A DNA stretch of 38,771 nt from Octopus bimaculoides (Eukaryota), in NCBI RefSeq assembly GCF_001194135.2, contig NC_068988.1:78623309-78662079 (forward strand), written 5' to 3'. Position 1 is the first letter of the stretch; every line of letters starts with the position of its first letter. Shown one piece after another: positions 15,070-36,500 of this stretch. The notes beneath the pieces were generated by a model, which saw nothing but the letters and a program-made list of their open reading frames with translations, was not told the DNA's origin and did no database searches. A program made the translations under genes and the position numbers.

Positions 15070-16089
15070 TTAGTCAAAGTATGAGCCGTGAACATCTATG
15101 CATCTCTGTCATCGATGAAAGAAATTAATTGTGCCTCGTTGATAAAAAACTTATTGGCTTTGATGCTAAGAAATCTTTGAAAGCTGATTCCACCGCTGGT
15201 TTGGACCTGAAAATTTTATCACTTAAAAACGTGTTTAAATGCTTAAAAATGGTAGTCAGTGGGTGAAAGATCAGGAGAATATGGGGGATGTGGTAAAGTC
15301 TCGTATCCCAAGCCTGTGAGTTTTTGCGGCGTCATTCTTGCAGCATGTGGCTTTGCATTATCATGGAGCAGAATTGGGTCACGCCTATTCACCAATGCAG
15401 GTTTCATTTTTTTCAAGTAAGCATACATTTCAGCGAGTGAATTGCAATGAACCTTTACTGTAATGCTCTTATGGGTTGCAGAAAGCTGTAATGGACAACA
15501 CCAATTGCAGACCACCAGACAGTCGTCACCATAATCTTGTGTTGATGCAACTTTAGTTTTGGGAAATGTTTGGGGGACTCATCAGGATCAAGCCATTGAC
15601 CTGATCGTTTACGGTTATCATAAAGGATCCACTTTTCATCAAAAGTGACTATTCAGTCAAGAAAAGGATCATTGGTGCTTCGCAGAAAGAGCATTGAGCA
15701 CACTTCAAAACGCCGAACATTTTGATTTTCATTGGGCTCATGCGGTACCCATTTTTCAAGCTTTTTCACCTTACCAATCTTCTGCAGATTGCATAAGACC
15801 GTTGTAATACCGACACCAAGTGCCGGAGATATTTCTCTGCCACTTTGACGTTGGTTATATTAAACAATTGCTTTCAATTGTTCATTGTCAAGACTGCATG
15901 GCGTCCTCTACTTTCTTCAGCTTCAAAGCTCCCATCACCACAACGGAATTTCTGAAACCACCTTCGTACTATGTGATCACTTGTGGACCCCTCTCCCCAT
16001 GCTATGTTGATATTGGTAGTAGTTTGGGAGGCATTGTGCCTAAGCTTGAACTCATGCAAGGTAAGTAAGCGAAGGTCCATTCTTGTCAT
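15070..16089 (-). pseudogene. Mariner transposase pseudogene (Hsmar1-like)
   Basis: LLTLHEFKLRHNASQ...RRWFQKF; KWVPHE; IVTFDEKW; HDNAKPH...YSPDLSPTDYHF with 34 residues between D2 and D3; ends GSYFD*. At least 2 in-frame stops and 3 frameshifts. Confidence 0.95.
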
Positions 16090-34405: not shown

Positions 34406-34737
34406 GGTATGACAGACTTTAACAGACTGTATATATATATATATATATATACATATAGCCTTGGCCAAAATTATTAGGCCTCCCTAATGTTTTGGGGTTC
34501 TGCTATCTCAATGTTAATGAAACACGTGCACATATTAGGTAATGGTATATTTCACAATATACAATAGTTTTAATATCTGGCTGACCCTCCTTTAGCATTA
34601 GTTACCGCTTTTATACTGTGCTGTACAAATGCAACCAATTATGAGTAAGACCAACGTCCAAAATTAACTTACGTTTCCTTGATTATTTCAGAGTTTTATG
34701 CTAAAATACGTTGTAGATACAGTTTGTAAACAGTAAA

Positions 34738-35890
34738 ATGCCTAAAACAAAGGAGTTGAGTGAGCGTGAGCGAGGTCAGATCGTAGCTCATCATGAAGCT
34801 GGAATGTCTCAAAGGCAAATTTCTCTAAAGACGAAATGTTCTCGATGTGCGGTGCAAACGACTCTCAGGCACTTCAGAAATGCAAAAAATGTGAAGACGA
34901 TACAAAGAACAGGTAGAAAAAGGGTTGCATCACCTTGTGATGACAAATCCATCATCCGTCAGTCGCTCAGAAACAGGAGAAAAACATCATCGGACCTCTG
35001 TGCGGACTTCAACGAGGCAAGTACTTCACAAATATCAACCAGAAATGTTAGAAGAAAGCTTGTAGAGTACGGTTTGAAAGGCTTTAAAGCCAGGAAGAAG
35101 CCTTGGGTTTCTGAAGCGAATATGGAAAAACGTCTTCAGTGGGCCAAAAACCACTCAAATTGGACCAGTGAGCAATGGTCGAAAGTCATATGGTCTGATG
35201 AAAGTAACTATGAGGTAAGATAGTACATGTATTCAATGAACATATAAACTTAATGTAACTGGTTTGTTGCCCAAAATATATTAAAAAAAATATCCAGCAT
35301 AAAGCTAATATTATATTTCATGTTCTTACTTAGGATTTCGGTACATCTGATGTAACTTTCGTGCATCGCAGAGTTGGGGAAGCATTTAAGGCTGAATGTC
35401 TGGTACCAACTGTAAAACATGGGGGTGGTTCTATCATGGTGTGTGCCTGCATGTCTGCCACAGGACCTGGAGAAATGTTTTTATGTCAAGGAAGGATGAA
35501 TTCAGCTACTTATGTTCTTATGTTAGTAGATGTTTTAGAGCCAGCAATTGCTAAATTGCATCTAGGAGTGTCGACAAAACAGTGTTATCAACAGGACAAC
35601 GCTCTCTGTCATACAACAAAGAATACTCGTCAATGGTTTGAGACACAGGTTATAGTTCCCATGGACTGGCCAGCTCAAAGTCCCGATCTAAATCCGATCG
35701 AACACCTATGAGGAACTCTTGGTGAAGCTATCAGGAACACAATAATTAAAAATAAAGAGCATTTGTATCAAGAGTTGAGAGAAGAATGGAGTAAAATAGC
35801 TGCTAGCACCGGGGAGAAACTAGTTGATTTAATGCCTAGCCGTATAAAAGCGGTAATTGATGCTAAAGTAGGGTCACCAGATATTAAAAC
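34738..35890 (+). pseudogene. Two-exon Tc1 transposase (~344 aa reconstructed), nearly intact
   Basis: Exon 1 (34738-35214) MPKTKELSERERGQIV...WSDESNYE. Exon 2 from 35334: DFGTSDVTFVHRR...TVKHGGGS...QQDNALCH...WPAQSPDLNPIE (D34E). TGA at 35709-35711 (W to stop) and a 1-bp deletion near 35878. Confidence 0.93.
35215..35333 (+). other. Putative spliceosomal intron in the Tc1 transposase (119 nt, phase 0)
   Basis: GAG|GTAAGA donor, CTAAT branch-like motif at 35305-35309, pyrimidine-rich TTTCATGTTCTTACTTAG|G acceptor, very AT-rich. Removal restores the frame and Tc1 motif spacing. Confidence 0.85.
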
Positions 35891-36003
35891 TAATGCATAT
35901 TGTGAAATATTCCATAATCTACCATGTGCACTAGTTTCATTAACATTGAGATAGCAGAACCCCAAAACATTGGGGTGGCCAAATACTTTTGGTCAAGGCT
36001 GTA

Positions 36004-36024
36004 TATATATATATATATATATAT

Positions 36025-36066
<42 letters not shown>
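36004..36066. repeat. (TA)n(GATA)n microsatellite
   Basis: Directly visible, right of the Tc1 TSD. Confidence 0.95.
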
Positions 36067-36067
<1 letters not shown>

Positions 36068-36500
36068 TTAGCTGGTGTACCCGGTAATTCCCGGGGGTAA
36101 AGATGTTCTATTTAAATGCCTTATTAATCTGATATAAAAAAGCAATTTTGTTATAACTGCCACAAAAAAGGTGTATTTTCTATTGCGAAAAAGTATAAAA
36201 GACTGTCAGTTGGAGGAGGGAGAGATTGTCGGAGGTTGGCTAGAGAGGTTGTCGGAGGTTGGCGAGAGAGACTGTTGGAGGTGTTAGAGAGAGGCTTTCG
36301 GAGGTTGGCAAGAGAGGTTGTCGGAGGGAGTGGCATCTTTGTTCCAAAATTTCAGTCCTGCAGGGCTTCGTGATACACAATGTTTTTGGTTTCGCCGTTG
36401 GGTGTAAAGGTTAATAAATTTTTCGGATTTCCAACTCTAGAGCATCCGACATAGAGCTGTCCGTGAGAAAATCAGGATTGGGGCGCACTTATTAAATACG
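36067..36500. mobile_element. Unclassified non-autonomous repeat, possibly Helitron/DINE-1-like
   Basis: Starts TAGCTGGTGTA followed by a CCCGG-taattc-CCGGG hairpin; internal 23-bp minisatellite; ccaaaatttcag block. The classification is by resemblance only. Confidence 0.35.
36220..36329. repeat. 23-bp G-rich minisatellite, ~4.8 copies
   Basis: Consensus GAGAGGTTGTCGGAGGTTGGCNA; units start at 36220, 36243, 36266, 36289 and 36312. Confidence 0.9.

What the first reader, a model, noticed from the sequence alone, without database searches (positions are those of the whole stretch)
35215..35333. Spliceosomal intron inside a Tc1 transposase, five codons after the first catalytic Asp
Seen: the ORF track shows separate ORFs, but a 119-nt GTAAGA...CTAAT...TTAG segment splices them in frame to WSDESNYE|DFGTSDVTFVHRRVGE, matching the length of the intronless Tc1 motif (WSDESKFNLFGSDG..YVRR). 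Unspliced RNA stops at 35221-35223, giving a 161-aa product with the paired-like DNA-binding domain only. Established: Tc1, Tc3 and Minos contain introns, and tissue-specific splicing controls the P element through a truncated repressor. Inference: splicing here could toggle transposase versus repressor. I do not recognise this intron position from described families.
Basis: partly seen in the sequence, partly recalled or inferred. Interest (0 to 1): 0.72.

Follow-up and report, generated by a model that had tools for sequence, protein, structure and literature searches.

The report
Conserved intron in a Tc1 transposon
The 119-base segment is a genuine intron that a whole lineage of Tc1-type jumping genes carries at the same codon boundary. 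This copy is a dead relic, and there is no evidence yet that the intron acts as an on/off switch.

Summary
Window 34456-36001 is a 1546-bp Tc1-like (DD34E) transposon with TA flanks and inverted ends. Its transposase gene is split by a 119-nt GT...AG segment (35215-35333; 24% GC against 42-43% in the exons). Removing it restores a reading frame that aligns without gaps to homologues and to the Sleeping Beauty catalytic domain.

It is not a private insertion. Eight other distinct family members have a GT...AG intron at exactly this phase-0 boundary, five codons after the first catalytic Asp. They come from a butterfly, two beetles, a bee and four assemblies of unnamed sequencing runs. Their introns are 111-115 nt, AT-rich and unalignable, while the flanking exons are conserved. 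Four of these members splice in silico to intact 344-aa proteins and have near-perfect ends. The nearest relatives outside the clade are intronless.

The position differs from the Minos-type intron, which lies 42 codons upstream in a Minos-like relative. I found no published description of this lineage.

The window copy is broken by a nonsense codon and a 1-nt deletion. No RNA data could be reached. The transposase/repressor toggle therefore remains conjecture, and nothing in the intron sequences points to regulation.

The parts
34456..36001 (+). Whole Tc1-like (DD34E) element, 1546 bp. It sits between TA dinucleotides (34454-34455 and 36002-36003) inside a (TA)n microsatellite.
   Evidence: Inverted repeats and self-BLAST. 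The termini TA|CAGCCTTGACCAAAAGTATT... match those of the insect members.
34456..34616 (+). Left terminal inverted repeat, about 160 nt. The first base is mutated (TAGCC instead of CAGCC). Its inner part is the reverse complement of the last codons of the transposase gene and still reads ...AKGGSARY*.
34738..35214 (+). Exon 1, 477 nt, codons 1-159. It encodes the paired-like HTH DNA-binding domain, the KARKKPW basic stretch (the usual Tc1 position of a nuclear-localisation signal; assigned from general knowledge, not tested) and the first catalytic Asp (D154, 35197-35199).
   Evidence: ORF. (HTH_Tnp_Tc3_2 at residues 70-141, HTH_23; HTH_SB below its cutoff). Exon 1 is also 477 nt in all three annotated close insect homologues.
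35215..35333 (+). Intron, 119 nt, phase 0. Donor gag|GTAAGA; branch candidate CTAAT 35305-35309; pyrimidine-rich tail; acceptor TTAG|ga. If retained, an in-frame TAG at 35221-35223 gives a 161-aa product.
35334..35887 (+). Exon 2, carrying the rest of the DDE domain (D247 at 35595-35597, E282 at 35700-35702, so DD34E). It is broken by TGA at 35709-35711 and by a 1-nt deletion after 35876. The ancestral stop would be 35885-35887.
35842..36001 (+). Right terminal inverted repeat, about 160 nt, 89% complementary to the left arm. It overlaps the 3' end of the coding sequence.

Best explanation
The 119 nt are an ordinary U2-type spliceosomal intron, inherited from the common ancestor of a distinct DD34E Tc1 lineage. 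In this lineage the transposase gene has two exons. Exon 1 (159 codons) encodes the paired-like DNA-binding domain, the basic KARKKPW stretch and the first beta-strand with the first catalytic Asp. Exon 2 encodes the rest of the RNase-H-like fold. Splicing by the host is obligatory to make the roughly 344-aa transposase.

The intron persists because a cut-and-paste DNA transposon has no RNA copy step that could remove it. That point is inference.

The window copy is an old, inactive member. It has a nonsense codon, a frameshift, a mutated left terminus and arms that have diverged to 89%.

What is shown: the anatomy, the conservation of position and phase, the drift of the interior, the intactness of spliced ORFs in relatives, and the intronless state of the nearest out-clade relatives. 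What is inferred: that the intron is actually removed from RNA, and that removal is constitutive.
For: **Within the window.**
- Removal restores the frame, a continuous DDE_3 match and gap-free alignments.
- There is a sharp GC drop, 24% against 42-43%.

**In relatives.**
- The same codon boundary (after SDES[ND][FYI][EQ], before [IVD]FGT) carries a GT...AG intron in Danaus chrysippus L001 (113 nt), Hypothenemus hampei L002 (113), Acanthoscelides obtectus L003 (114), Anthophora plagiata L012 (115) and four distinct Logan elements L005, L009, L010 and L011 (111-114).
- At least ten ORF2-only proteins in Logan/ENA begin at or within a few residues of [IV]FGTPG; several carry a leader that reads the pyrimidine tract and CAG in frame.
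- Spliced Logan elements give intact 344-aa proteins, and their contigs carry 94-100% complementary ~30-nt TIRs in elements of about 1557-1563 bp. P0253 lies on 23 contigs.
- Intron interiors have pairwise identity 0.58 against 0.54 for shuffles, with no shared k-mer beyond chance. The flanking 120 nt of exon are 0.71 identical.

**Clade structure.**
- A neighbour-joining tree groups the window protein with the intron-bearing clade.
- The nearest outsiders, P0004 and P0005, are single uninterrupted ORFs.
- The TIR termini are shared: CAGCCTTGGCCAAAAGTATT.GGCACC.
Against: - No transcript evidence.
- The insect gene models are computational predictions.
- The window protein is only 47-51% identical to the other intron-bearing members (41% to the bee member), against 41-45% to intronless ones. 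Its placement in the clade therefore rests on an NJ tree without bootstrap, plus the shared intron and TIR ends.
- The tight length range (111-119 nt) despite complete sequence turnover is not explained by neutral inheritance alone.
Confidence: 0.8

Rival explanations
1. Regulated intron retention. The intron is spliced only in some tissues or conditions. Unspliced mRNA yields a roughly 161-169-aa protein with the DNA-binding domain and the KARKKPW basic stretch (the usual Tc1 position of a nuclear-localisation signal, not tested here). That protein would occupy the transposon ends and repress transposition, like the P element 66-kDa/KP repressors.
For: - Exon 1 is a self-contained DNA-binding module (Tc3 N-terminal domain 1U78 and SB 5UNK matches).
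- Retention terminates translation 2-15 codons into the intron in 8 of 9 members.
- In three members a stop follows the donor hexamer directly (GTAAGATAG, GTATGTTAA, GTAAGTTAG).
- With a single intron, a retained transcript has no downstream exon junction and so would escape junction-dependent decay (inference).
- Intron length is held at 111-119 nt.
- Precedent: mRNA-processing control was proposed for Bari3 (PMC4120734). P element IVS3 is established knowledge.
Against: - No conserved intronic motif.
- Donor sites are mostly strong and differ between members (GTAAGT, GTGAGT, GTATGT, GTACGT), unlike a conserved weak site.
- The stop distances fit the roughly 9% per-codon stop rate expected at about 25% GC. 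The Danaus member reads 44 codons before a stop.
- No RNA data at all.
Confidence: 0.15
2. The 119 nt is a private insertion, a local rearrangement or an assembly artefact in this one copy, and only mimics GT...AG by chance.
For: Only one copy exists in the window, and no closer relative was found anywhere. The segment ends carry a 6-nt inverted match, GTAAGA...TCTTAC.
Against: Eight other elements from different genomes have an intron at the identical codon boundary, with similar length and unrelated sequence.
Confidence: 0.02
3. A domesticated, host-co-opted Tc1-derived gene that acquired an intron, like the TLEWI genes of bivalves.
For: Introns in Tc1-derived sequences are often linked with domestication (10.1101/656579; PMC13548663).
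Against: - TIRs and TA flanks are present.
- The coding sequence of the window copy is decayed.
- Relatives are multi-copy, have near-perfect TIRs and sit at unrelated loci in several orders of insects.
- The signature is DD34E, not DD36E.
Confidence: 0.02

Closest known systems
Minos (Drosophila hydei) and Minos-like elements
   Same: A Tc1-like DD34E element with TA target and inverted ends. It has a two-exon transposase with one short phase-0 GT...AG intron that must be spliced out (PMC2874221 for Minos; L004).
   Different: - In a Minos-like element (L004; ORF2 68% identical to Minos) the 61-nt intron lies between GYGFYK and AKEKPLL. That corresponds to window residues 117/118, which is 42 codons upstream, before the catalytic domain.
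- The proteins are only about 30% identical.
- Minos has ~255-bp TIRs.
- Minos proper was not read at DNA level. Its position is inferred from the relative and from ORF2 starts such as P0122.
Tc1 and Tc3 of Caenorhabditis elegans
   Same: Founding DD34E elements whose transposase genes each carry one short intron (established knowledge, recalled from memory).
   Different: As I recall, both introns lie in the N-terminal DNA-binding part and not next to the first catalytic Asp. This was not tested here because no DNA of these elements was reachable.
TLEWI (Tc1-like elements with introns; Puzakov et al., bioRxiv 10.1101/656579)
   Same: Tc1-family transposase genes with spliceosomal introns at positions conserved within the group.
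   Different: TLEWI elements are DD36E, have 3-6 exons, lack TIRs and TSDs and are low-copy. They are restricted to pteriomorph bivalves and are proposed to be domesticated. The present lineage is DD34E, has 2 exons, and has TIRs, TA flanks and intact multi-copy members.
P element third intron (IVS3) control
   Different: It belongs to a different superfamily. Its regulation rests on defined exonic silencer sequences and soma/germline factors. No comparable conserved element was seen here and no RNA data exist.
Bari3 cryptic splicing and Sclerotinia Tc1-mariner introns
   Same: Splicing events within Tc1/mariner transposase transcripts, discussed as possible regulation (PMC4120734, PMC4188875).
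   Different: Bari3 splicing is a 699-nt cryptic event that removes the DNA-binding part. The Sclerotinia introns are in fungal pogo/Fot-like families, at other positions and often optional. Here the intron is obligatory for an intact ORF.

Membership tests
Tc1 family (DD34E) of IS630/Tc1/mariner | DDE triad with 34 residues between the second Asp and the Glu | tested here: met
   D154, D247 and E282 are invariant columns in the alignment; 282-247-1 = 34. DDE_3 match. SB100X catalytic domain at E 2.7e-46.
Tc1 family (DD34E) of IS630/Tc1/mariner | N-terminal paired-like bipartite HTH DNA-binding domain | tested here: met
   HTH_Tnp_Tc3_2 at 58.8 bits and HTH_23 at 27.7 bits, both above cutoff. 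HTH_SB reaches 30.3 bits, below its 43-bit cutoff. Tc3 transposase 1U78 matches residues 1-140.
Tc1 family (DD34E) of IS630/Tc1/mariner | Terminal inverted repeats starting CAG... and a TA target duplication | tested here: met
   The arms are 34456-34616 and 35842-36001, with TA on both sides. Caveat: the element lies in a (TA)n run, so the duplication cannot be told apart from the microsatellite.
Spliceosomal (U2-type) intron | GT...AG boundaries with a pyrimidine-rich 3' end and a plausible branch point | tested here: met
   Donor GTAAGA, CTAAT 25 nt upstream of the acceptor, 74% pyrimidines at -22..-4, acceptor TTAG.
Spliceosomal (U2-type) intron | Position and phase conserved among homologues while the interior drifts | tested here: met
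   Nine distinct elements share the same boundary. Introns are 111-119 nt. Interior identity is 0.58 against 0.54 for shuffles; exon flanks are 0.71 identical.
Spliceosomal (U2-type) intron | Spliced junction observed in RNA | not testable with these tools
Minos-type two-exon Tc1 elements | Intron between the HTH domain and the basic linker (GFYK|AKEKP) | tested here: not met
   The Minos-like L004 intron is at 755-815, equivalent to window residues 117/118. The window intron follows residue 159.
TLEWI | DD36E signature, 3-6 exons, no TIRs or TSDs | tested here: not met
   The window element is DD34E, has two exons, and has TIRs and TA flanks. TLEWI definition taken from 10.1101/656579.
P-element-like splicing switch | Tissue-dependent retention that gives a functional repressor | not testable with these tools
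   No RNA or functional data. The indirect sequence signatures looked for were absent.

The most novel reading that the evidence does not exclude
An undescribed Tc1 lineage that is still active in insects (intact 344-aa spliced ORFs, near-perfect ends) has kept a roughly 114-nt intron of fixed length next to its first catalytic residue. It keeps the intron because retention produces a nuclear, end-binding truncated protein that self-limits transposition. This would be a splicing-based autoregulation not known for Tc1/mariner elements.
Probability: 0.12. Interest if true: 0.65.

Novelty: new member of a known kind. Interest (0 to 1): 0.38.

Why it matters
Tc1/mariner transposase genes are described as intronless "as a rule" (PMC10379824, PMC4120734). 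The textbook exceptions are few: Tc1, Tc3, Minos and TLEWI.

This finding adds a lineage, spread over at least three insect orders plus the unidentified host of this window, in which one intron at a new position has been kept through deep protein divergence. It has three practical consequences.

- ORF-based transposon mining splits these elements into two "genes" of about 161 and 185 aa and will undercount or misclassify them.
- The intact insect members are candidates for a new transposon tool. Their expression needs splicing, so they would be silent in bacteria.
- The lineage offers a clean system to ask whether splicing limits DNA-transposon activity.

For the window itself the result is ordinary: a dead transposon copy.

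Tried and rejected
- **Exact look-up of the 161-aa ORF1 product.** Not on record.
- **Closer relatives or other copies of the window element.** None above about 51% identity in the 5.8-billion word-indexed search. None in the exhaustive search of 1.84 billion representatives. None in metagenome contigs, where only 27-32% hits appeared. None in viral contigs. None elsewhere in the window. Copy number and host could therefore not be established.
- **Host identification.** Rfam found nothing. Pfam on other window ORFs gave only a mariner-like DDE fragment.
- **Minos primary paper.** PMC43865 and PMID 8197129 are not held. I replaced them with DNA of a Minos-like relative.
- **Tc1 and Tc3 intron positions.** The literature search was uninformative, so these rest on memory.
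- **Introner or MITE origin of the 119 nt.** Considered and dropped. There is no repeat of it in the window, no TSD, and the 6-nt terminal inverted match is absent in the other members.
- **TLEWI membership.** Considered and rejected (DD36E, no TIRs).

Full report
**1. What is at the coordinates**

The window holds one Tc1-like element at 34456-36001 (1546 bp). It is bounded by TA on both sides and lies inside a (TA)n run. Its inverted arms are about 160 nt long and 89% complementary.

The coding sequence starts at 34738.
- An ORF of 161 aa ends at TAG 35221-35223.
- A second frame resumes downstream.
- Removing 35215-35333 (119 nt; GTAAGA...CTAAT...TTAG) joins them in frame to ...WSDESNYE|DFGTSDVTFVHRRVGE....
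- The segment is 24% GC; the coding flanks are 43% and 42%.

The spliced product behaves as a normal transposase.
- It gives HTH_Tnp_Tc3_2 at residues 70-141 and one continuous DDE_3 match at 151-303.
- It aligns without a gap over the junction to nine homologues and to the SB100X catalytic domain, 5CR4, at E 2.7e-46.
- The catalytic residues are D154, D247 and E282, so the signature is DD34E.

The copy is dead.
- TGA at 35709-35711 replaces the conserved Trp of HLW.
- One G is missing after 35876, which destroys the family C-terminus. The left arm still reads ...AKGGSARY* in reverse complement.
- The left terminus is TAGCC instead of CAGCC.

**2. Private insertion or family feature**

The closest named proteins are 47-50% identical. 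They come from Danaus chrysippus (P0001), Acanthoscelides obtectus (P0002) and Hypothenemus hampei (P0003). I fetched their loci.
- Each gene is about 113 nt longer than its coding sequence.
- In each, exon 1 is exactly 477 nt, as in the window.
- In each, a GT...AG intron follows SDESNF[EQ] and precedes [IV]FGTPG.

A profile of these four sequences (A2) was searched again.
- It brought up at least ten proteins of 179-203 aa that hold only the DDE part and begin at or within a few residues of [IV]FGTPG.
- Several have a short leader that is the pyrimidine tract plus CAG read in frame, for example MNLSFLNTFFFNFQ|IFGTPG.
- Their contigs (L005-L011) all carry an upstream ORF of 161-169 aa and a GT...AG intron of 111-114 nt at the same boundary.

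Spliced in silico, four distinct Logan elements give intact 344-aa proteins.
- Their contigs hold whole elements of about 1557-1563 bp with 94-100% complementary ~30-nt ends: TA|CAGCCTTGGCCAAAAGTATTGAGCACCC.
- One of them lies on 23 contigs.

A more distant bee member has a 115-nt intron at the same place. It is Anthophora plagiata P0038, 41% identical to the window protein and 50% to the Danaus protein.

The nearest relatives outside the group, P0004 and P0005 (43-45%), are single uninterrupted ORFs. A neighbour-joining tree puts the window protein with the intron-bearing sequences. The TIR termini agree as well.

**3. Behaviour of the intron across the nine elements**

| Property | Result |
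|---|---|
| Lengths (nt) | 111, 113, 113, 114, 114, 114, 114, 115, 119 |
| GC content | 19-30% |
| Pairwise identity, interiors | 0.58 (0.54 for shuffled introns) |
| Pairwise identity, 120 nt of flanking exon | 0.71 |
| Shared 6-8-mers | None beyond the shuffled expectation |
| Donors | GTAAGA, GTATTG, GTAAGT (twice), GTACGT (twice), GTATGT, GTGAGT, GTATAT |
| Acceptors | Seven CAG, two TAG, behind tracts of 63-84% pyrimidines |

This is the pattern expected of a real, inherited spliceosomal intron.

**4. How it most likely works**

Shown:
- The gene has two exons, and only the spliced form encodes a complete transposase in every member examined.
- Exon 1 is a self-sufficient DNA-binding module that ends just after the first catalytic strand.

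Inferred:
- The host spliceosome removes the intron.
- Removal is constitutive.
- The intron is kept mainly because a cut-and-paste element never passes through an RNA copy that could delete it.

- Retention would give a 161-169-aa protein in most members.
- Because the gene has a single intron, a retained transcript would have no downstream exon junction to mark it for decay (inference).

I found none of the sequence signs that such regulation usually leaves.
- There is no conserved intronic or donor-site feature.
- Stops occur 2, 2, 2, 5, 5, 6, 10, 15 and 44 codons into the intron. That fits a stop rate of roughly 9% per codon in sequence of about 25% GC.

The narrow length range is the one observation that neutral inheritance does not explain.

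**5. Comparison with known cases**

- **General rule.** Reviews state that Tc1/mariner genes are intronless as a rule (PMC10379824; PMC4120734).
- **Minos.** Minos has a two-exon gene with a 60-bp intron (PMC2874221). I located the Minos-type intron in a Minos-like Logan element (L004). It is 61 nt and lies between GYGFYK and AKEKPLL. That corresponds to window residues 117/118, 42 codons upstream, so the position is different.
- **TLEWI.** These elements are DD36E, have 3-6 exons, lack TIRs and are bivalve-restricted (10.1101/656579). This is a different group.
- **Fungal and Bari3 cases.** These are optional or cryptic events at other places.
- **Tc1 and Tc3.** From memory, their introns lie in the N-terminal part. 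I could not test this.
- **This lineage.** Full-text searches found no description of it or of this intron position. Subscription literature and Repbase were not searchable.

**6. Limits**

- There is no RNA evidence.
- The host of the window is unidentified, and no second copy or close relative of this particular element was found.
- The insect gene models are predictions.
- The tree has no support values.

**7. Verdict**

The intron reading is supported by strong comparative evidence. The regulatory reading is untested and unsupported.

It is a new member of a known kind: an intron-bearing Tc1-like transposon, with the intron at a position not found in the literature I could search. It is of moderate interest to transposon specialists and of practical use for annotation. 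The copy in the window is itself a relic.

Noticed in passing
window 34456-34616 and 35842-36001: The window copy has ~160-nt inverted arms, whereas the close insect relatives have 25-42-nt arms. The left arm contains the reverse complement of the last ~13 codons and the stop of the transposase gene. It preserves the ancestral ...AKGGSARY* reading that the real 3' end has lost through a 1-nt deletion. The arm extension is therefore older than the frameshift.
   Followed up: partly
introns of window, L001, L002, L003, L005, L009, L010, L011, L012: Intron length stays within 111-119 nt across nine elements whose intron sequences are no more alike than shuffles and whose proteins are down to 41% identical. 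Element length is also held at about 1546-1563 bp. No explanation was found.
   Followed up: partly
window 35215-35223; L005 1387-1395; L009 769-777: In three of the nine elements the donor hexamer is followed directly by an in-frame stop (GTAAGATAG, GTATGTTAA, GTAAGTTAG). Retention would then add only two residues. Overall, the stop distances fit chance.
   Followed up: yes
L004 755-815: A Minos-like element from a Logan assembly carries a 61-nt GT...AG intron between GYGFYK and AKEKPLL. Dozens of Minos-like ORF2-only proteins of about 214 aa in Logan data show that this split is also family-wide.
   Followed up: partly
L004-L010 (records SRR21069059 to SRR21069290): All but one of the Logan contigs with intact intron-bearing elements, and the Minos-like contig as well, come from one block of run accessions (SRR210690xx-SRR210692xx). 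L011 is from SRR28250424. This suggests a single multi-species insect sequencing project. The organisms were not shown.
   Followed up: no
window 15243-15515 (- strand): A fragment of a mariner-like transposase (...HDNAKPH...PYSPDLSPTDYHF; weak DDE_3 match, E 2e-4). It is a second, unrelated Tc1/mariner relic in the window.
   Followed up: partly
window 34427-34455 and 36002-36067: The element is embedded in a (TA)n microsatellite, followed on the right by (ATAG)n. The TA target duplication therefore cannot be distinguished from the repeat. The whole window is dense in di- and tetranucleotide repeats and has 14 runs of N (5029 N in all), as in a draft eukaryotic scaffold.
   Followed up: partly
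window 36220-36327: A tandem array of a 23-bp unit (also scored as a 46-bp unit; 4.7 or 2.3 copies, GAGAGATTGTCGGAGGTTGGCTA) lies about 220 bp downstream of the element. Its meaning is unknown.
   Followed up: no
L012 1201-2389: The annotated Anthophora plagiata gene model skips a stretch that contains two in-frame stops (...DG*MNSERYISM*K...) as a second "intron". This looks like an annotation work-around for a decayed copy and not a real intron.
   Followed up: partly
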